Shown here piece by piece: positions 17,920-39,917 of a stretch of DNA of 64,000 nt. Below the pieces are notes generated by a model. It saw nothing but the letters and a program-made list of their open reading frames with translations, did no database searches and was not told the DNA's origin. The first letter of the stretch is position 1. Each line of letters begins with the position of its first letter. The translations under genes were made by a program, and so were the position numbers. Location of the stretch: positions 1 through 64,000 of IMG/VR virus record IMGVR_UViG_3300032116_000001. One strand, given 5' to 3'.

Positions 17920-18004
17920 ACCGCTCTGGAGTAGCCAAACTTGCTACAGGCAACAGTCTTAGAAACTGTCTCTTTTCTGGGTTGGAATCCCAGGGGCGGT
18001 ACCA
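17920..18004 (+). tRNA. tRNA-Leu (anticodon TAG), atypical
   Basis: ACCGCTC/GGGCGGT-ACCA; ACAGT-CTTAGAA-ACTGT; T-loop TTGGAAT. Confidence 0.75.
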
Positions 18005-18567: not shown

Positions 18568-18621
18568 AACCGATCAGTAAAAAATCCCCTGTTTTCGTGG
18601 GGGATTTTTGATAGATAAAGC

Positions 18622-19747
18622 ATGGCAACACGAGGCTGGGAGCCCACAGACTACAATCCGAACATTATTCGTGATGTTTCTAATCGAACCATTGAAGAAT
18701 TTGAAAACGATATTCGATTTTCTCGTGACTGGGGCTTCGTACAAAGTTATGGCCTTGAAAGAGCTACTCAGCTTCTGGGTCGAGCCCCAGATACCCGAGC
18801 AGTTGAATTCTTTAATGAGTTCATGTCTCAGTATTCCCGAGCCGTCGAGCTTATGGAACAGCTAGGCATCAAAAAGAAGATTCTGAAAAAATTCAAGCGA
18901 TATCCGATTGCTCCTTGTCTTTATGCTGATTTGAATGAAGAATGTAATGATGTATTGACGGGATCGAAAATCGGTGGAATTCCTGACCAGCGCCAAGCTG
19001 GAAGTGCGCTGTCTTCAAGGCAATATTGTTAGTCGCATCAAGGCAGCTTGGCCCAAGGATTCAAATGGTAAATATATGATATTCGTTGGCCAAATCAAAG
19101 TGCCTGGACACATCGTCGCTCCCTGGGATTATATCATGGGCGAGAAAATAGACAAGTATGGAAATTATGATCGACCTCTTAATGGGTTTAGCCACGGGCA
19201 GAACATTTTTGAACAAGAGCATACTTATTTAATTTTTCGCAGTGCGCATGCACCAAATTTTGGAGACATGTTCGATTGTGCGATGGTGCATTCTCGCTTC
19301 GATGCCAATGAATCGGTAAAGGAAGATAAATATATTGAGGCTGTGAAAAAAGCTATTCCGCAGTATCGCCGAAGCAACATGGAAGACAATTGTCCAATTT
19401 GGAGTGATCGGTGTCACACGCTAACTGATTACCGAGTTAGCATGACGCTTGATTTAATTCGCGACTTTGAATGGGCAGGTGGGTTTGAAGGCAATGTATT
19501 TGATTACATAGATTCGTGGAGAGAACACTTCGGTTCTTATGGCACAATTCAAATTTTTGGCGATCCAAGATCACAACAGACCCCACAGCGATTTGCTGAA
19601 ACACGCACTGTTTACCGTCCTCGAATGATGCGCCCGTGGCTTGGAATGACAGACCTAAAGCACGATTACACTTGGCAATATAATTTTTGTCACGAAGGTT
19701 TTCTGAGTGAATCAATTATGGGCAAAGTTGATGGAAGCTGTACCTAA
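18622..19747 (+). pseudogene. probable single gene split by a frameshift (18622..19032 + 18974..19747)
   Basis: One promoter, two overlapping ORFs in different frames, no clear start signal for the second. Confidence 0.45.
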
Positions 19748-19791
19748 TTAAAAATCCCCTGTTTTTCATGGGGGATTTTGATATATAAGGC

Positions 19792-20193
19792 ATGGCTGAT
19801 TATTACACCCATTTTTCCTTTGTCGTTGACGTTAAGAATCGTGAACAAGCAGACGGTTTGAAGAAAATGCTCACCCAGGCCAAAAATGAAGAGCTAAATG
19901 AAGAAACTTTGTACACTCCTTGGAGTTGTGAAACTAAGGACGATTTAACTAGCTTTTGGTTTCACTCTGATGATTGTGGTCAGGTTGATCTTATTGTTGA
20001 CATTTTGGCTAAATGGCAAGAAGACTTCAATTACGATCAGCCCATTTGTTTTGAGTGGGCGAATACTTGTAGTAAGCCCAAACTGGATGCTTTTGGTGGT
20101 GGGTCAGTTCTGATTTACAAGGGCGAAGCTCATTACACGAACACTTTTGATTGGTTGACTAAAAAGAAAGCCGAACTTGGAATCGTTGACTGA
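19792..20193 (+). CDS. hypothetical phage protein
   Basis: Promoter motif; MADYYTHFS...FEWANTCSKPKLDAFGGG. Confidence 0.75.
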   Translation: MADYYTHFSFVVDVKNREQADGLKKMLTQAKNEELNEETLYTPWSCETKDDLTSFWFHSDDCGQVDLIVDILAKWQEDFNYDQPICFEWANTCSKPKLDAFGGGSVLIYKGEAHYTNTFDWLTKKKAELGIVD

Positions 20194-20240
20194 CTAAAAA
20201 ATCCCCTGTTTTTCAATAGGGGATTTGATATATCAATTGT

Positions 20241-20375
20241 GCCAAGAAGCACTTGAAGTGCAGTCTACGGATATGCCTTATTAGGGCATGTGATTACTGC
20301 GTAGGAAGGACAGGGTGTAATGAAGTACGGTCGCGACGAAAAGTTACATCGGGTTAAAATCCCAACTTGGCACCA
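20241..20375 (+). ncRNA. 135-nt tRNA-like RNA
   Basis: GCCAAG/CTTGGC-ACCA acceptor, D-like and T-like hairpins, elongated internal arms, own promoter. Confidence 0.6.
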
Positions 20376-20397
20376 AATTGAAAAATGAGAATCTAAT

Positions 20398-20698
20398 CGG
20401 GGCGTGGCGAAATGGCAGACGCAGGGGACTTATAAAATGAGCACTTGTTTGTGAAAGCTGCAAGTGAATGCAATCAAATTCGGTGAAACCTTAACAGTTA
20501 GGCTGATGGCAATACCGAGCCAAGCTAACTCAAAACAGAGTTAGAAGGTGTAGAGACTAGATGGTTGCTGCCTAAGTCGAAAGATATGGCAAAGGTATAG
20601 TCCAGACCACAAAATCCTTTGGGATCGTAGTGAAAGCTATAGTGGTATGAAAATCCCTTAGTAGCAATACTGTGTGGGTTCGAGTCCCACCGCCCCGA
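20398..20698 (+). tRNA. tRNA-Leu (TAA) interrupted by a group I intron
   Basis: Exons 20398-20431 and 20650-20698; joining them restores GGGGA-CTT^AAAA-TCCCT. Confidence 0.92.
20432..20649 (+). mobile_element. group I intron (tRNA-Leu UAA type, IC3-like), 218 nt, no ORF
   Basis: Inserted after the U of the anticodon, ends in G; P AAATTCGGTGAAA, Q AATACCGAGC, R GTAGAGACTAGATGG, S AAGGTATAGTCC. Confidence 0.9.
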
Positions 20699-20748
20699 TT
20701 AGGTTATATATTGATTACTAATGCGCTTTGTGTGCTTTTAGTATAAGA

Positions 20749-21246
20749 ATGTTTGTGTCACGTTTGCAAAAATATACCCTAGAGGAGATAAAAGAAATAA
20801 TATCTAAATCAAAATCTTATGCTGAAGTAATTCGATCTATTGGTTTAATTCCTGCTGGTGGAAATTACAAAACATTGCAAAGTTTTGTACATGAATACCG
20901 AATTGATACTTCGCATTTTCTGGGCTCAGCTTGGGGGCGAGGAAACCAATTGGATTATCTCCACAATAGCAATAGAAAATCATTAGAAGATGTTTTTTCG
21001 GGAAAAGTAGCTTATAAATCAAGCCATAAATTAAGGCTTCGGCTGATTAAAGAAGGATATTTTGAGCATAAATGCTATAAATGTGGACTAAAAGAGTGGC
21101 AAGGACACGAAATACCCTTGGAATTAGAGCATATAAATGGAGATCATTGTGATAACAGTCTCGAAAACCTCATTATTCTTTGCCCCAACTGTCATGCTCA
21201 AACAGAAACTTATGCTGGTAAAAACAAAAAAAGACGATTAGGTTAA
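20749..21246 (+). CDS. HNH homing endonuclease
   Basis: CYKCG...LELEHINGDHCDNSLENLIILCPNCH. Confidence 0.9.
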   Translation: MFVSRLQKYTLEEIKEIISKSKSYAEVIRSIGLIPAGGNYKTLQSFVHEYRIDTSHFLGSAWGRGNQLDYLHNSNRKSLEDVFSGKVAYKSSHKLRLRLIKEGYFEHKCYKCGLKEWQGHEIPLELEHINGDHCDNSLENLIILCPNCHAQTETYAGKNKKRRLG

Positions 21247-27030: not shown

Positions 27031-27047
27031 TTTTCATTCAAAAGAAC

Positions 27048-27133
27048 GGAACGTAATCCCGACAGGTGCTGGGCGATGTTTGCTAAACAATCGGCTTTGT
27101 AAAAGAAGTGGGGTTCGAGTCCTCTGCGTTCCT
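27048..27133 (+). tRNA. tRNA-Ser (GCT)
   Basis: GGAACGT/GCGTTCC; anticodon loop TTGCTAA; GGTTCGAGTCC; no encoded CCA. Confidence 0.75.
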
Positions 27134-31202: not shown

Positions 31203-31913
31203 ATGAAGCTCTACACCACGCAACCAATTGAAGTGTGGAACAAACTCCAAGAACAAAAGATTCTGATCGCAGATGCGATGCTGGGAGAACACATCGATCA
31301 AGAATACGCAGAAAAGAATGGGTTTTCTATCGAAGATGATAGCTTCTATGCCGCCTATTCGTGGATGAAAGAGCAAATGGAACATCGAATTCCAGGCTAC
31401 CAAGGTAACTGGCCGTGGTGGGCATGGACGCATAAAATTGACATCCGATCAGAACGACATCTGTACCCAAAGGGAGAAGAATTTGTTATGATCGAACTCG
31501 AAATCCCCGATGAGAAAGTATTATGTTCTTGCTTCCAGGGATGGCACTCCGTTTTGAATCGACGCTATCTAGCGAAAACTATGATCGAAGAAGCCAAAGC
31601 CGATCAAGAATGGATGGAGATTACGAACATGGACACAGACCCCGAGAAACCCAAAATCTCACTCTACCAATTACGAAAGTATGCCAAGGGCGAAGAACCA
31701 TGGCCCGAAACAATCGAAGATTCCCCCGAAAAAGCACGAAAGAAGCAAGAATATAAAGAAAAGCAAAAACGAACATGGGAAAATATCTTCGACATTGAAT
31801 GGATGAAGAAATCACAGTACGAAGGCGGGGACCAGATTCAAGCCTGCTTTGAAGAACTAAACATCAACCAAGTCATCAAAGCAAAGATGTTCAAAGGGGC
31901 GCGAAAGTCATAA
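31203..31913 (+). CDS. DUF3841 domain protein
   Basis: LYTTQ...AYSWMKEQM...WPWWAW...ELEIPDEKVLCS..WHSVLN...WENIFD...IQA. Confidence 0.8.
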   Translation: MKLYTTQPIEVWNKLQEQKILIADAMLGEHIDQEYAEKNGFSIEDDSFYAAYSWMKEQMEHRIPGYQGNWPWWAWTHKIDIRSERHLYPKGEEFVMIELEIPDEKVLCSCFQGWHSVLNRRYLAKTMIEEAKADQEWMEITNMDTDPEKPKISLYQLRKYAKGEEPWPETIEDSPEKARKKQEYKEKQKRTWENIFDIEWMKKSQYEGGDQIQACFEELNINQVIKAKMFKGARKS

Positions 31914-31953: not shown

Positions 31954-32163
31954 ATGAACGATTCAAATCGCTTTGAAGTAATCAGCTCAGGTCCATACAA
32001 TTTGAAGATTGTTGCGCAAACTATGACTGAGTGCATGGATATGATTCGACGAAACTCTGACATGGTGGACTTCTGGGCAGTTTTAGACCATTCTACGAAA
32101 ACCGTGGTCGCTTTAAGCCAGGACTGGAAAGTCTTGCCAACATTCAAACCCGCAGTAAACTAA
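31954..32163 (+). CDS. hypothetical protein
   Basis: Promoter motif upstream. Confidence 0.6.
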   Translation: MNDSNRFEVISSGPYNLKIVAQTMTECMDMIRRNSDMVDFWAVLDHSTKTVVALSQDWKVLPTFKPAVN

Positions 32164-33443
32164 TGAAAGAATCTCGATATATTTTCGCTGACGTGAGCGC
32201 GAATAATAACAAGTTTTGGAACATCAAAATTGAACCAAACTTCACGGTCGTAACTTCGTGGGGCCGAGTCGGAGATAACGCACAATCAAAGGAATTTCCC
32301 CACGGAAGCCTTGCAGACGCAGAAAAGTTCTTCGATAGGAAATGCCGCGAAAAGGAACGAAAAGGATACGTTAAGCAAAGAGTTCTGATCGGAGAATACA
32401 CCACGCAAGATAACACTTCGCTTGCGTCAGTTGCCAAACAACAAATCAACACAAATAGCCCCGAATTAGATGAACTAATTGCCTTCCTGACTAAAGCAAA
32501 CGTTCATAACATTCTAACAGCAACAGCTATGGAATACGACACTTCAAAGGGAGTTTTTACAACGCCCCTCGGAGTTGTCACGAACGATGCCATTCAAGAT
32601 GCACGAAGCATCTTGGCATCAATGGGCCTTCTTGTGCATAATCAAGATTGGAACTCCCCCGATTGGAATTCGCTCTTGTCTATGTACCTTACTGCCATCC
32701 CTCAAAAGATTGGACGCAGAAAGCCAGACCCAAGAGAACTCTTCCCGAGCCTTCAAGCTATTCAAAATCAAAGCAAAATTCTTGACGACCTGGAAGCATC
32801 ATTCCAATCTGTCGTGAGCGCACCACTGACGCAGAAAGGGGATGACACAAACACGCCACAAGTGTTTGATGTGAAATTGCATCTTGTAGACGATCAAAGC
32901 ATAATTCGACGAATCAAAAACAAATACGACTCCACACGAAAGACCATGCACGCATCATATCATCTGGGGGTGAAACGAGTCTTTTCTGTCGAAATTAACG
33001 CGATGGCAAAGGCATATGGTGATCGGGGAAAGAACGTCGGCAACGTGATGGAACTCTGGCATGGGACACGAGCGGGGAACCTTTTGAGCATCCTTAAAGG
33101 CGGACTGCAAGTCCCACCCGCATCGAGCCCTCATGTGACGGGGAGAATGTTCGGGGATGGATTGTATTTTTCAGATCAGTCCACGAAAAGCCTCAATTAT
33201 GCCTATGGAGCAGCACCAGGACAAAGAGGAGGAATTGAATCGTCCACGTTCATGTTTCTCGCAGATGTAGCAATGGGACGCCCATTTGTCCCAACGTCCT
33301 ATACACGACCGTCAAAGTACCCCGTGCAAGGACATGATTCAATATTTGCAAAAGCAGGACAATCAGGCGTACACAATAATGAAATGATCGTATACACCAC
33401 CGATCAATGCAACCTCACCTACCTGGTTGAATTCGGAAACTAA
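32163..33443 (+). CDS. WGR-domain poly(ADP-ribose) polymerase (PARP)
   Basis: WGRVG; helical regulatory domain; LWHGT, GRMFGDGLYF, KSLNY, NEMIVY (H-Y-E triad). Confidence 0.92.
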   Translation: MKESRYIFADVSANNNKFWNIKIEPNFTVVTSWGRVGDNAQSKEFPHGSLADAEKFFDRKCREKERKGYVKQRVLIGEYTTQDNTSLASVAKQQINTNSPELDELIAFLTKANVHNILTATAMEYDTSKGVFTTPLGVVTNDAIQDARSILASMGLLVHNQDWNSPDWNSLLSMYLTAIPQKIGRRKPDPRELFPSLQAIQNQSKILDDLEASFQSVVSAPLTQKGDDTNTPQVFDVKLHLVDDQSIIRRIKNKYDSTRKTMHASYHLGVKRVFSVEINAMAKAYGDRGKNVGNVMELWHGTRAGNLLSILKGGLQVPPASSPHVTGRMFGDGLYFSDQSTKSLNYAYGAAPGQRGGIESSTFMFLADVAMGRPFVPTSYTRPSKYPVQGHDSIFAKAGQSGVHNNEMIVYTTDQCNLTYLVEFGN

Positions 33444-33492
33444 AAAAATCCCCCGTTATCAAAAGGGGGATTTGATATAATAAAATACCACA

Positions 33493-33786
33493 ATGACCGT
33501 TAAACAAGCATTTGAAAAGGCCTTTGGACCAATCCCCGAAGGGGCTACTTGCCATATCGGGTGCCGCGACATGTACAAGAACATCGAAGTGGACGCTTGC
33601 TATCGCCACATTGGTGAGACGTTCTTTTTGAACGTTCATAACAAGTTTGTTAGGTTCTGCGACCATTTTGCGTTTGGACCCGACATTAGCCACCGACCCG
33701 CGTCAGCGTTCCTCGGCTTCTTTGGGGGTGAGTATGATCGTGTGGTCGAAGAATGGATCGAATCTCAAAACGAAAAGCATAACTAA
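33493..33786 (+). CDS. hypothetical protein
   Basis: Promoter-like motif upstream. Confidence 0.65.
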   Translation: MTVKQAFEKAFGPIPEGATCHIGCRDMYKNIEVDACYRHIGETFFLNVHNKFVRFCDHFAFGPDISHRPASAFLGFFGGEYDRVVEEWIESQNEKHN

Positions 33787-34682: not shown

Positions 34683-35264
34683 GTGATTAATATCAGTAAT
34701 TTCCGCGGTCCTATCGTCCAAATCGAACTTCGCCAGGGGAGTCTTTTGGAAGCAAAAGACTTAGACATCATTGTTAATGCTGCGAACTGTAAGATGCGCG
34801 GTGGCGGAGGATTAGACGGCGCGGTTCATGATGCTGCAGGCCCTAACCTTCTTGAAAAGCTGAAAGAACTTGCCCCCTACGGCAGCCCGACTTCCCATCC
34901 CGTTGTTACAGATGGCTTTGAAACTGGATTTAAGAAAATCATTCACACTCCTGGTCCTGTGTGGGCTGATGGTGTTTCAGGCGAGCGCATTGCACTTCGG
35001 GCAACATATGATTATGCTCTTGATGCCGCTAATGCGATCTGCAAAAACAAGAATTATAAATCAGTGGGGTTTGGTTCTATTAGCACAGGAATCTTTGGAT
35101 TTCCTCTTGACCTTGCAATGCCCATCGCTCTTGGTGCCGTATCTGAATGGGTGCGGGTTGCGCAAAATGTTTATTTCAACAAAATTGTCTTTGTGATGTA
35201 CGGGGAAGAAGAATACAACAAGTATAAAACAGCTTTTGACGCTATTAAAGCGTGGAACCCGTAA
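34683..35264 (+). CDS. macrodomain ADP-ribose hydrolase (MacroD/YmdB-like)
   Basis: IVNAAN..MRGGGGLDGAVHDAAG, IIHTPGP, ISTGIFGFP. Confidence 0.92.
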   Translation: MINISNFRGPIVQIELRQGSLLEAKDLDIIVNAANCKMRGGGGLDGAVHDAAGPNLLEKLKELAPYGSPTSHPVVTDGFETGFKKIIHTPGPVWADGVSGERIALRATYDYALDAANAICKNKNYKSVGFGSISTGIFGFPLDLAMPIALGAVSEWVRVAQNVYFNKIVFVMYGEEEYNKYKTAFDAIKAWNP

Positions 35265-39020: not shown

Positions 39021-39917
39021 ATGAGTAGAGTAAAGAGAGTTATTGATAATGGTCTGGTATCGAAAAACTCAGTGCCAAAGCACTTCCCCGATTCGATTCA
39101 ATACGAGACGATCATGGGAAGTGTGGCCTACGGAGTGTCTTCTGATACGTCGGATATGGATATTTATGGATTTTGTATCCCGCCCAAGCACATTGTCTTT
39201 CCTCACTTAGCGGGACATATCCCTGGCTTTGGTCAACAGCCTGAGAAATTCGAGCAATGGTCGGTGCATCATATCAAAGATGAAGAAAAAAATACCGAGT
39301 ACGATTTTTGCATTTACAATATCGTCAAGTATTTTAGTTTGGTTATGGAAAACAATCCCAACATGGTGGATTCTCTTTTCACTCCACAAAACGCGATTTT
39401 GCACTGCTCTCCAATCGCTCAAATGGTGCGTGACGAACGTCATATCTTCTTGCATAAGGGAGCGTGGCACAAGTTCAAGGGCTATGCCTACTCGCAGATG
39501 CACAAAATTCGATCAAAGGAGGCTCCGCAAGGCAAGCGAAAAGAGCTGGTGGAACAGTTTGGATTCGACGTGAAGTTTGCTTATCATGTTGTAAGATTGA
39601 TTGACGAAGTTGAGCAAATTCTTGTTGAGGGCACTCTTGATCTTCAAAGAAATCGAGAACAGCTTAAATCTATTCGGAGAGGTGAATGGACTTTAGAGGA
39701 AATCGAGGAATACTTTACTCGTCGAGAAAAAGAACTTGAGCTGGCTTATGCTAACTCAAAGCTGCCTCACACGCCCGATGAAAAGCGAATCCGCCAGCTT
39801 TTGATGAATTGCCTTGAGCATCATTACGGAAACCTATCAGACGCCGTAGTGGATGTTGACGCGGCCACGAGAACACTTCAGCAAGTTGCGCATCTAATTC
39901 GACAAGGGGGATTCTAA
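39021..39917 (+). CDS. DNA polymerase beta-superfamily nucleotidyltransferase (YcgL-like)
   Basis: GSVAYGVSSDTSDMDIYG; NPNMVDSL; DVKFAYHVVRL. Confidence 0.88.
   Translation: MSRVKRVIDNGLVSKNSVPKHFPDSIQYETIMGSVAYGVSSDTSDMDIYGFCIPPKHIVFPHLAGHIPGFGQQPEKFEQWSVHHIKDEEKNTEYDFCIYNIVKYFSLVMENNPNMVDSLFTPQNAILHCSPIAQMVRDERHIFLHKGAWHKFKGYAYSQMHKIRSKEAPQGKRKELVEQFGFDVKFAYHVVRLIDEVEQILVEGTLDLQRNREQLKSIRRGEWTLEEIEEYFTRREKELELAYANSKLPHTPDEKRIRQLLMNCLEHHYGNLSDAVVDVDAATRTLQQVAHLIRQGGF

What the first reader, a model, noticed from the sequence alone, without database searches (positions are those of the whole stretch)
20241..20375. Oversized tRNA-like RNA with CCA end but no normal anticodon arm
It has its own promoter, an acceptor helix GCCAAG/CTTGGC + ACCA, a D-like hairpin GCAC/GTGC and a T-like hairpin GGG-TTAAAAT-CCC. 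The middle is two long arms (CTACG..ATGCC/GGCAT..CGTAG and GGTGTAAT/GTTACATC). It could be a tRNA mimic or decoy for host tRNA-targeting nucleases or synthetases, or a tRNA with insertions.
Basis: partly seen in the sequence, partly recalled or inferred. Interest (0 to 1): 0.6.

Follow-up and report, generated by a model that had tools for sequence, protein, structure and literature searches.

The report
Orphan tRNA-like RNA in jumbo phage
A 379-kb phage carries, among its tRNA genes, a 135-base gene that folds with the two ends of a tRNA (acceptor helix, encoded ACCA, T-loop-like hairpin) but has two long hairpins where the anticodon part should be; it resembles in layout the still-unexplained "RNA C" of phage T4, has no detectable relatives, and its function is unknown.

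Summary
The fold is more stable than shuffles (z = -2.8). The tRNA-end hallmarks occur together: U-1, G1-C72, A73, encoded CCA, and a 7-nt T-like loop closed by G-C. A scan for that combination expects about 0.2 chance hits per window.

No tool calls it a tRNA, tmRNA or any Rfam family. A model of the T4 RNA C family, which I show has strong covariation, does not match it either. It shares only RNA C's layout: acceptor-like closure, long arm, A-rich linker, second arm, T arm.

The host is a 378,848-bp rIIA/rIIB jumbo phage. All copies from many samples are identical. One diverged relative covers only bases 1-68 and shows one change, G-C to G-U. Covariation therefore cannot be tested.

My best reading (0.45) is a non-decoding tRNA mimic that is matured like a tRNA. 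The main rival (0.25) is a decaying tRNA relic. The decoy function is not tested. The claimed promoter is only a recurrent hairpin plus TGATATAT cassette, not a consensus promoter.

The parts
20199..20226 (+). Upstream hairpin (AAATCCCCT / AGGGGATTT, 10-nt loop) after the stop codon of the 133-aa gene. It is terminator-like and forms the first half of a recurrent intergenic cassette.
   Evidence: Sequence. The same cassette lies before the genes at 19792, 18622 and 33493. In the diverged relative, two of the three intergenic changes fall in its loop.
20226..20234 (+). TGATATATC, an extended -10-like element ending 6 nt before G1. It is a possible promoter; nothing shows that it is one.
   Evidence: recurrent motif. 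The consensus scan did not call it. In the relative the G of TG is T.
20241..20375 (+). The 135-nt tRNA-like RNA gene as a whole.
   Evidence: Fold z = -2.82. No ORF of 50 aa or more on either strand. Hallmark scan.
20241..20246 (+). 5' strand of the acceptor-like helix (GCCAAG), preceded by T at -1.
   Evidence: Pair probability 0.98-1.0.
20249..20261 (+). Mini D-like hairpin (GCACT-TGA-AGTGC). It has no G18 G19.
20264..20305 (+). Long arm 1. It has a 6-bp outer stem, an asymmetric internal loop (GAU / GUGAUUACUG), a 5-8-bp inner stem and an apical loop UUAUUAG (or the triloop AUU).
   Evidence: The one substitution in the relative (C20287T) turns G35-C47 into G-U.
20306..20313 (+). Purine-rich 8-nt linker GAAGGACA.
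20314..20350 (+). Long arm 2. It is an 8-bp stem with a 21-nt loop that holds a small GC hairpin, and it occupies the place of a variable arm.
20351..20363 (+). T-like hairpin GGG-UUAAAAU-CCC. It keeps G53-C61, U54, U55, R57 and A58, but position 56 is A rather than C.
   Evidence: Comparison with the T loops of the 15 tRNAs.
20366..20375 (+). 3' strand of the acceptor-like helix (CTTGGC), then discriminator A and the encoded CCA. The trailer AAATT matches that of several tRNAs in the window.
20398..20698 (+). Neighbouring tRNA-Leu(UAA), 23 nt downstream, probably co-transcribed. It is interrupted by a 218-nt group I intron (20432-20649) and has no encoded CCA.
   Evidence: Rfam RF00028, 58.2 bits. 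ARAGORN with introns.

Best explanation
This is a real small RNA gene of the phage's tRNA island: a non-decoding tRNA mimic.

Its two ends form the 'top half' of a tRNA. That half consists of a 6-bp acceptor helix with G1-C72, U at -1, discriminator A and encoded CCA, stacked next to a T-loop-like hairpin. These are the handles that bacterial RNase P, the 3'-trimming and CCA-repair enzymes and other tRNA-end readers use. The RNA would therefore be cut out and kept like a tRNA. It could be transcribed from its own cassette or together with the tRNA-Leu(UAA) 23 nt downstream.

The 'bottom half' is replaced. Instead of a D elbow and anticodon arm there are a mini hairpin and two long perfect hairpins, so the RNA cannot read codons.

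I take it to act as a stable tRNA look-alike that occupies or titrates a factor recognising tRNA ends. The equally unexplained RNA C of T4 is built the same way.

Shown here: the sequence features, the fold stability, the genomic setting and the absence of any coding potential. Inferred: expression, processing and any binding partner.
For: - All helices are present and perfect (33 pairs, no mismatch), with z = -2.82.
- The tRNA-end hallmark combination is expected about 0.2 times per window by chance. Otherwise it picks out only tRNAs.
- The element is intergenic, on the same strand as the 15 tRNAs, and has the same ACCA-AAATT 3' context.
- A recurrent gene-start cassette precedes it.
- A relative whose neighbouring gene is 88% identical in nucleotides keeps the element. 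It has one change in 68 nt, G-C to G-U, and an intergenic distance of 554 nt before the next gene against 555 nt here.
- T4 RNA C has the same order of modules, and its own structure is well supported by covariation (22 of 44 pairs).
- The island also encodes an RlaP RNA-repair nucleotidyltransferase, a PARP-like protein and a Macro domain.
Against: - No homologue exists anywhere beyond near-identical copies, so there is no covariation test.
- The low divergence in the relative also covers the last 100 nt of the neighbouring gene (98%). It may therefore reflect recent recombination rather than selection.
- The T stem is only 3 bp, or 5 with a C-A mismatch, and the acceptor only 6 bp. The stacked helix is one layer short of a tRNA's 12.
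- There are no expression data.
- The same window holds other sub-threshold tRNA-like sequences, which fits ongoing tRNA decay in this island.
Confidence: 0.45

Rival explanations
1. It is a tRNA relic. A former (perhaps type II) tRNA gene acquired insertions in the anticodon and variable regions and lost its elbow. It is now decaying, possibly still transcribed but without function.
For: - Jumbo-phage tRNA islands turn over. The same window has two other sub-threshold tRNA-like sequences (17920-18004, tRNA model 25 bits; 27047-27133, tRNA-Sec model 35.6 bits, below the cut-off of 47).
- There are HNH and PD-(D/E)XK endonuclease genes between the tRNAs.
- The T stem and the acceptor are both shortened.
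- Relaxed ARAGORN can force a tRNA-Tyr with an insert.
Against: - The non-tRNA parts are two long perfect helices and a perfect mini hairpin. Decay should leave mismatches, yet the fold beats 198 of 200 shuffles.
- The arms are not copies of any repeat in the window.
- The only substitution seen preserves pairing.
Confidence: 0.25
2. It is a cis-acting part of the tRNA-Leu(UAA) transcript. On this reading it is a structured leader, insulator or processing module rather than a free-standing RNA, and the ACCA is incidental.
For: - Only 23 nt separate it from the intron-containing tRNA-Leu.
- With flanks included, the closing helix can extend by 2 + 6 pairs into leader and trailer (TCAATTGT... 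/ ...CAAATTGA), burying A73 and C74. That looks more like an excision stem than a free acceptor end.
Against: - The extension rests largely on AATT pairing with AATT. ACCA-AAATT is also the ordinary 3' context of other tRNAs here.
- The hallmark combination (U-1, G1-C72, A73CCA, T-loop motif) is not needed for a leader.
Confidence: 0.12
3. It is a chargeable non-canonical tRNA. An anticodon-independent synthetase, such as the LeuRS, SerRS or AlaRS types, would aminoacylate it. It would then be used in translation, or as an aminoacyl donor outside the ribosome.
For: - It has a discriminator A, an encoded CCA, a G1-C72 pair and a T-loop motif.
- The apical loop of arm 1 can be drawn as a 7-nt loop UU-AUU-AG with U33 and a purine at 37.
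- Established knowledge of synthetase identity sets: several synthetases ignore the anticodon.
Against: - There is no G3-U70 (Ala), no G73 (Ser), and no G18 G19/C56 elbow as used by LeuRS.
- An AUU anticodon with unmodified A34 is not a normal decoder.
- The anticodon arm would be about twice the normal length, which does not fit the ribosome.
- The MFE closes that loop to a triloop.
Confidence: 0.08
4. It is a chance constellation in an AT-rich intergenic spacer and not an RNA gene at all.
For: - It was selected a posteriori by a reader who was looking for structure.
- It is an orphan.
- z = -2.8 is not extreme.
Against: - The hallmark scan expects 0.2 hits per 128 kb scanned. Restricted to + strand spacers of the tRNA island, the expectation is far lower.
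- The spacer is kept, with nearly the same length, in a diverged relative.
Confidence: 0.07

Closest known systems
Phage T4 RNA C (species 1 RNA, rnaC) and its family in Tevenvirinae
   Same: - It is a ~140-nt stable RNA encoded inside a tRNA cluster.
- The order of modules is the same: acceptor-like closing helix, long arm, A-rich linker, second arm abutting a T arm, 3' acceptor strand.
- Its function is unknown (PMC3014915; PMC9697503).
- The host here is also an rIIA/rIIB phage.
   Different: - There is no sequence or profile similarity. Model R2 of the family gives no match to the candidate at E <= 10, while ordinary tRNAs score 9-13 bits.
- RNA C has a canonical 5-bp T arm (UUCGAAU), a 7-bp acceptor with two U-U mismatches, no D-like hairpin and no encoded CCA.
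- The candidate has a 3-bp T stem with UUAAAAU, a 6-bp acceptor, a mini D hairpin and an encoded ACCA.
tmRNA tRNA-like domain
   Same: The 5' and 3' ends form an acceptor helix with a T arm and CCA. There is no anticodon arm, and the D region is reduced.
   Different: - There is no G3-U70.
- It is 135 nt rather than 260-400 nt and has no pseudoknot set.
- The only internal ORF is a 22-codon ATG ORF that runs past the CCA.
- ARAGORN and Rfam tmRNA models do not match it.
Bacterial and phage Y RNA-like YrlA (partner of Ro/Rsr in RNA-repair operons)
   Same: It is a non-coding RNA with a tRNA-like module. Some jumbo phages carry Ro/TROVE with a tRNA-like partner (PMC7824862). This island holds an RlaP RNA-repair enzyme.
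   Different: - From knowledge of the family (recalled, not tested here): in YrlA the closing helix is the Ro-binding stem, and the tRNA-like part is internal with canonical T and D loops.
- No Rfam match of any kind was found.
- No TROVE or RtcB gene was found among the 30 window ORFs scanned.
Canonical type II tRNA (long variable arm), with or without an intron
   Same: It has an acceptor helix, discriminator, CCA and T-loop motif, an arm in the variable-arm position, and a location among tRNAs.
   Different: - There is no D loop with GG and no C56.
- There is no 5-bp/7-nt anticodon arm at the right distance.
- An 8-nt linker precedes the 'variable' arm.
- It is 135 nt long.
- It is not detected at default thresholds.
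147-nt element of Klebsiella phages RaK2/K64-1 (L094:4758-4904), just after tRNA-Asn
   Same: It is an oversized structured spacer in a jumbo-phage tRNA cluster, closed by 6 bp and followed by ACCA, with z = -3.5. It lies close to a tRNA that carries a group I intron with an HNH gene after it.
   Different: - The match to the candidate's model is weak (10.3 bits, E about 0.5).
- Forcing the candidate's architecture on it costs about 9 kcal/mol against its MFE.
- It is absent from the Muenster tRNA region searched (L095), and blastn finds it only in identical RaK2-type copies.
- I do not claim it as a homologue.

Membership tests
tRNA (Rfam RF00005 / ARAGORN) | Cloverleaf scoring above the family threshold | tested here: not met
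   There is no ARAGORN call. There is no RF00005 match at the gathering score, nor at E <= 10 in a 701-nt search. ARAGORN reports a tRNA-Tyr with a 46-nt insert only at 80% of its threshold.
tRNA (Rfam RF00005 / ARAGORN) | 7-bp acceptor helix, discriminator, CCA | tested here: inconclusive
   It has 6 bp plus an A-A mismatch, then A73 and an encoded CCA.
tRNA (Rfam RF00005 / ARAGORN) | T arm: 5-bp stem and a T-psi-C-R-A loop with G53-C61 | tested here: inconclusive
   G53-C61, U54, U55, R57 and A58 are kept. C56 is A, and the stem is 3 bp, or 5 with a C-A mismatch.
tRNA (Rfam RF00005 / ARAGORN) | D loop with G18 G19, and a 5-bp anticodon stem with a 7-nt loop at the standard distance | tested here: not met
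   The D-like loop is TGA/TTGAA. The anticodon position is occupied by a 42-nt two-tier arm.
tRNA (Rfam RF00005 / ARAGORN) | Aminoacylation and use on the ribosome | not testable with these tools
   This needs a biochemical assay.
T4 RNA C (rnaC) family | Match to a covariance model of the family | tested here: not met
   Model R2 was built from 7 Tevenvirinae sequences (A5; 44 pairs, 22 with compensatory changes). It gives no match at 20241-20375 at E <= 10 with filters off.
T4 RNA C (rnaC) family | Module order: acceptor-like closure, long arm, A-rich linker, second arm, T arm; located in a tRNA cluster | tested here: met
   Compare. The location is given.
tmRNA | tRNA-Ala-like domain with G3-U70, a tag reading frame and pseudoknots | tested here: not met
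   Position 3-70 is C-G. ARAGORN finds no tmRNA. The only Rfam tmRNA match in the region is the 3' end of the neighbouring tRNA-Leu.
YrlA / bacterial Y RNA | Match to the Rfam Y RNA-like models, plus a Ro/TROVE partner gene | tested here: not met
   No match at E <= 10. No TROVE domain among the 30 window ORFs scanned. The other ~315 kb of the genome was not available to me.
tRNA with group I intron | Group I core between tRNA halves | tested here: not met
   RF00028 matches only the neighbour at 20421-20624. The candidate's inserts are 30-40 nt hairpins.

The most novel reading that the evidence does not exclude
The RNA is a dedicated counter-defence decoy. It would be a minimal acceptor/T 'top half' with a ready-made ACCA end on a non-decoding scaffold. 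It would soak up host effectors that attack or modify tRNA 3' ends or acceptor stems, such as nucleotidyltransferase toxins of the MenT/AbiEii type or HEPN RNases that clip the ACCA end. Alternatively it would feed the phage's own RlaP-type repair enzyme. T4 RNA C would then be an independent solution to the same problem, which would give a function to a class of phage RNAs unexplained for 50 years.
Probability: 0.12. Interest if true: 0.8.

Novelty: new variant of a known kind. Interest (0 to 1): 0.5.

Why it matters
Phage tRNA clusters are now read as counter-measures to host attacks on the translation apparatus. Yet the non-tRNA RNAs embedded in them, T4 RNA C and D, have had no function since the 1970s.

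This window adds a second tRNA-like RNA with the same layout and no sequence relationship, in a distant jumbo phage next to RNA-repair and ADP-ribose genes. That suggests non-decoding tRNA mimics are a recurrent component of such islands.

It also shows that standard tRNA and Rfam annotation misses them. A simple 'tRNA-end hallmark' scan finds them.

Tried and rejected
**Searches for homologues** (all found only the phage itself or nothing)
- blastn of the element and of 3 kb around it against 50,697 phage records.
- Exact and loop-anchored degenerate patterns in IMG/VR and in GTDB genomes.
- Synteny through the upstream 133-aa protein in IMG/VR and JGI metagenomes, where the next-best relatives are 44% identical or less and lack the element.
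- Synteny through the 257-aa and 209-aa neighbours.
- Covariance model R1 of the element over about 530 kb of fetched loci, including tRNA regions of RaK2-like, Muenster, 7t3, Atu_ph07 and two huge uncultured phages.

**Searches for variants**
- The protein database gave 54-64 contigs of the same phage. All seven further copies I fetched through it (L097, L099-L103, L105) are identical in the RNA.
- One 82%-identical lineage exists. One contig (L098) stops at base 68. The DNA of the other (1292 bp, sample 3300059473) could not be fetched.
- A search with the N-terminal 70 residues of the HNH protein found nothing.

**Ideas tested and dropped**
- T4 RNA C homology was rejected at the model level.
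- RaK2 element: considered as a family member and not claimed.
- attP-like copy of a host tRNA end: no bacterial match.
- Antisense regulator or repeat-derived arms: only 12-nt chance matches in the window.
- Small peptide gene: a 22-codon ATG ORF (20320-20388) with an AGGAAGGA stretch upstream exists. An ORF of that size is common by chance, so I dropped it.
- SRP, 6S, YrlA and riboswitch classes: no Rfam match.
- A hallmark scan of 530 kb of other phage loci for elements of 96-220 nt gave two hits. I folded the 7t3 one (L096:4830-4960): it is not a structured oversized element (z = -0.8) and its 3' part looks like a missed ordinary tRNA. I did not follow up the other (L095:7924-8056), which lies inside an annotated CDS.

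Full report
**Where it sits.** The window is part of IMGVR_UViG_3300032116_000001, a 378,848-bp phage contig. It encodes rIIA and rIIB homologues. Between about 18 and 45 kb it carries 15 tRNA genes, all on the + strand and all with encoded CCA. The finding lies in a 534-nt spacer (20194-20727) between a 133-aa gene and an HNH endonuclease gene. No ORF of 50 aa or more lies on either strand there. Only ORFs of 20-39 codons overlap it.

**The observation.** The parts list gives coordinates.
- The MFE structure has six helices, with 38 canonical or G-U pairs and no mismatch inside any helix.
- Its energy is -42.2 kcal/mol, against -32.4 +/- 3.5 for dinucleotide shuffles (z = -2.82, 2 of 200 shuffles as good).
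- Pair probabilities are near 1 for the acceptor-like helix, inner arm 1 and arm 2. They are 0.9 for the D-like and T-like hairpins and about 0.46 for the outer stem of arm 1.

The ends carry the set of features that mark bacterial tRNA ends. This reading rests on established knowledge of RNase P and T-loop determinants.
- T at -1, G1-C72, discriminator A and encoded CCA.
- A 7-nt loop UUAAAAU closed by G-C. It keeps U54, U55, R57 and A58 and changes only C56, the partner of the D-loop G19, which is also missing.

I coded these features as a scan: 6-bp closure, NCCA, and an adjacent hairpin with a TT..A loop closed by G-C.
- It recovers 14 of the 15 tRNAs, this element and one further tRNA-like gene, all on the + strand.
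- Random Markov copies of the window give 0.2 hits.
- The same scan, restricted to 96-220 nt, over 530 kb of other phage loci gave two hits. The 7t3 one (L096:4830-4960) folds poorly (z = -0.8) and its 3' part looks like a missed ordinary tRNA. I did not follow up the other (L095:7924-8056), which lies inside an annotated CDS.

**The promoter claim.** The claim is not established. The consensus scan finds no + strand promoter. Upstream there is a hairpin (20199-20226) and then TGATATATC, ending 6 nt before G1. The same hairpin + TGATA(T/G)A cassette precedes protein genes at 18622, 19792 and 33493. At 33493 it reads TGATATAAT. It may be an extended -10 promoter, in which case G1 sits about where transcription would start. 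In front of protein genes, however, it lies only 4-11 nt from the ATG, so its role is open.

**What it is not.**
- ARAGORN and the Rfam tRNA, tRNA-Sec, tmRNA, Y RNA-like and all other families give nothing on it, even at E <= 10 in a 701-nt search.
- ARAGORN with introns allowed, at 80% of its threshold, forces a tRNA-Tyr(GTA) with a 46-nt insert. That model has a mismatched anticodon stem and an unstructured variable region, and I do not credit it.
- It has no G3-U70 and no tag frame, so it is not a tmRNA.
- The arms are not copies of any repeat. The RNA has no antisense match beyond 12-nt chance hits in the window.
- Its 3' end is not a copy of any bacterial gene in GTDB genomes, so it is not an attP-type tRNA fragment.

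**Relatives.** I found no homologue.
- Sequence searches in the phage collection, IMG/VR and GTDB genomes returned only the phage itself.
- Synteny searches through three neighbouring proteins found the same phage in three JGI contigs, with the RNA identical in all three. The protein database records it on 54-64 contigs, and the seven further copies I fetched are also identical.
- The next relatives of the 133-aa protein in those contig collections are 44% identical or less and have no such element.
- A single-sequence covariance model (R1), run with filters off over tRNA regions of RaK2-like, Muenster, 7t3, Atu_ph07 and uncultured huge phages, gave nothing significant.

One intermediate lineage exists. 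Its neighbouring protein is 82% identical, and the gene is 88% identical in nucleotides.
- The contig I could read (L098) ends at base 68 of the RNA.
- Within those 68 nt there is one change, C20287T, which turns G35-C47 of inner arm 1 into G-U.
- Of three changes in the 47-nt spacer, two lie in the loop of the upstream hairpin and one removes the G of TGATATAT.
- The last 100 nt of the neighbouring gene are also 98% identical. The low divergence may therefore be a recombination tract and is not evidence of selection on the RNA.
- A second contig of that lineage has a 554-nt gene-free gap before the next gene, against 555 nt here. The whole spacer layout is therefore probably kept, but its DNA could not be fetched.

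**Closest known thing.** T4 annotates two small stable RNAs, rnaC (139 nt) and rnaD (119 nt), at the end of its tRNA cluster. Reviews and a 2022 omics study state that their roles are unknown (PMC3014915, PMC9697503).

I collected rnaC from seven Tevenvirinae genera or lineages. The consensus structure has 44 pairs, and 22 of them show compensatory changes. Its modules run in this order:
- a 7-bp acceptor-like helix, with two U-U mismatches that become U-A and C-G in Yersinia phage TG1;
- a long arm closed by AGG/CCU;
- an A-rich linker;
- a 10-bp second arm with a conserved loop;
- one nucleotide, then a canonical T arm.

The candidate has the same order of modules, plus a mini D hairpin and an encoded CCA. 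A model of the family (R2) does not match it at E <= 10 with filters off, whereas ordinary tRNAs score 9-13 bits through their T arms. So it works like, or at least is built like, RNA C, but it is not a member of that family.

A 147-nt spacer element of RaK2/K64-1 is closed by 6 bp plus ACCA and lies next to tRNAs and an intron-containing tRNA (z = -3.5). It gave the only full-length hit of R1, at 10.3 bits. The candidate's architecture costs it about 9 kcal/mol against its MFE. blastn finds it only in identical RaK2-type copies, and neither model R1 nor that blastn search finds it in the Muenster tRNA region I searched. I note it as a parallel and do not count it as kin.

**Context.**
- Twenty-three nt downstream lies a tRNA-Leu(UAA) (20398-20698). 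It is split after U34 by a 218-nt group I intron, has no encoded CCA, and is followed by the HNH gene.
- The island also encodes a WGR-PARP-like protein, a Macro-domain protein, an RlaP 'RNA repair pathway' nucleotidyltransferase, DUF3841, a PD-(D/E)XK nuclease and a second HNH.
- This is the mix that comparative work on jumbo phages links to defence of the translation apparatus (PMC7824862).
- No Ro/TROVE or RtcB gene was seen in the 30 ORFs I scanned.

**Interpretation.** I commit to a non-decoding tRNA mimic that is transcribed and matured like a tRNA (0.45). The features, the fold and the setting are shown. Expression, RNase P cleavage at G1, a stable CCA end and any partner are inferred.

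A speculative detail fits a retained elbow. Canonical tRNAs here pair G19 with C56. The atypical gene at 17920 has G56 and a D loop with C but no GG. The candidate has A56 and U in its D-like loop. This is inference only.

The rivals are:
- a decaying tRNA relic (0.25), favoured by the other sub-threshold tRNA-like sequences and the shortened stems, and disfavoured by five perfect non-tRNA helices;
- a cis-acting leader or excision module of the tRNA-Leu transcript (0.12), favoured by a possible 8-pair extension of the closing helix into the flanks, though this rests mostly on AATT pairing with AATT;
- a chargeable odd tRNA (0.08);
- chance (0.07).

**Verdict.** This is a real and unusual feature that standard annotation does not see. 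It is best filed as a new variant of the known but unexplained kind 'tRNA-like stable RNA inside a phage tRNA cluster'. The lack of any comparative or expression evidence keeps both the confidence and the score moderate.

Noticed in passing
window 20398-20698 (+): This is a tRNA-Leu(UAA) interrupted after U34 by a 218-nt group I intron (20432-20649), the classic cyanobacterial/plastid insertion site. It is the only tRNA here without an encoded CCA. A free-standing HNH endonuclease gene (20728-21246) follows it. Default ARAGORN misses it. Intron relatives occur in huge uncultured phages, Atu_ph07 and RaK2-like phages.
   Followed up: partly
window 17920-18004 (+): This is an 85-nt cloverleaf ending in ACCA that ARAGORN and Rfam miss (tRNA model 25 bits, cut-off 29). 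It has a 7-bp acceptor, an anticodon loop CUUAGAA (UAG), a D loop without GG and a T loop UUGGAAU with G56. A G19-C56 to C-G swap at the elbow is possible.
   Followed up: partly
window 27047-27133 (+): This is an 87-nt tRNA-like sequence that matches the tRNA-Sec model below threshold (35.6 bits, cut-off 47, E = 0.001). It has no encoded CCA, and its loop contains CUA. It could be an atypical or decaying tRNA.
   Followed up: no
window 18577-18618, 19752-19790, 20196-20234, 33442-33482 and others: A recurrent intergenic cassette: stop codon, then a hairpin AAAAATCCCC(loop)GGGGATTT, then TGATA(T/G)A(T/A), only 4-11 nt before the next start codon (8 nt before G1 of the RNA). It resembles the promoter-stem-loop cassettes of T4-type phages (recalled from memory, not tested). 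It could imply very short leaders.
   Followed up: partly
window 31203-31913, 32163-33443, 34683-35264, 39021-39917: DUF3841, a WGR-PARP_reg-PARP catalytic protein, a Macro-domain protein and an RlaP RNA-repair nucleotidyltransferase are interleaved with the tRNA genes. This is an ADP-ribose/RNA-repair set inside the tRNA island.
   Followed up: no
L094:4758-4904 (Klebsiella phage RaK2/K64-1 type, OU509535): This is a 147-nt structured spacer element closed by GUACCU/AGGUAC plus ACCA (z = -3.5). It lies right after tRNA-Asn and before a truncated tRNA-Asn copy. Nearby (L094:3921-4220) is a tRNA(CAU) split by a group I intron, followed by an HNH-like ORF. The element is unannotated in RaK2 and is overlapped by a 'hypothetical protein' annotation in K64-1 (NC_027399).
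   Followed up: partly
L090:1909-2047 (T4 rnaC) and alignment A5: T4 RNA C is conserved between tRNA genes in at least six Tevenvirinae genera. Its tRNA-like structure is strongly supported by covariation (22 of 44 pairs). No Rfam family turned up for it in my scans of other sequences, though I did not scan T4 itself.
   Followed up: partly
L106:3619-5939 (Ga0364573_10216, 156-kb contig): A different huge phage has a run of 11 tRNA-Leu genes plus one tRNA-Arg within 2.3 kb. They lie next to a class I aminoacyl-tRNA synthetase, a release-factor-like gene and a formyltransferase.
   Followed up: no
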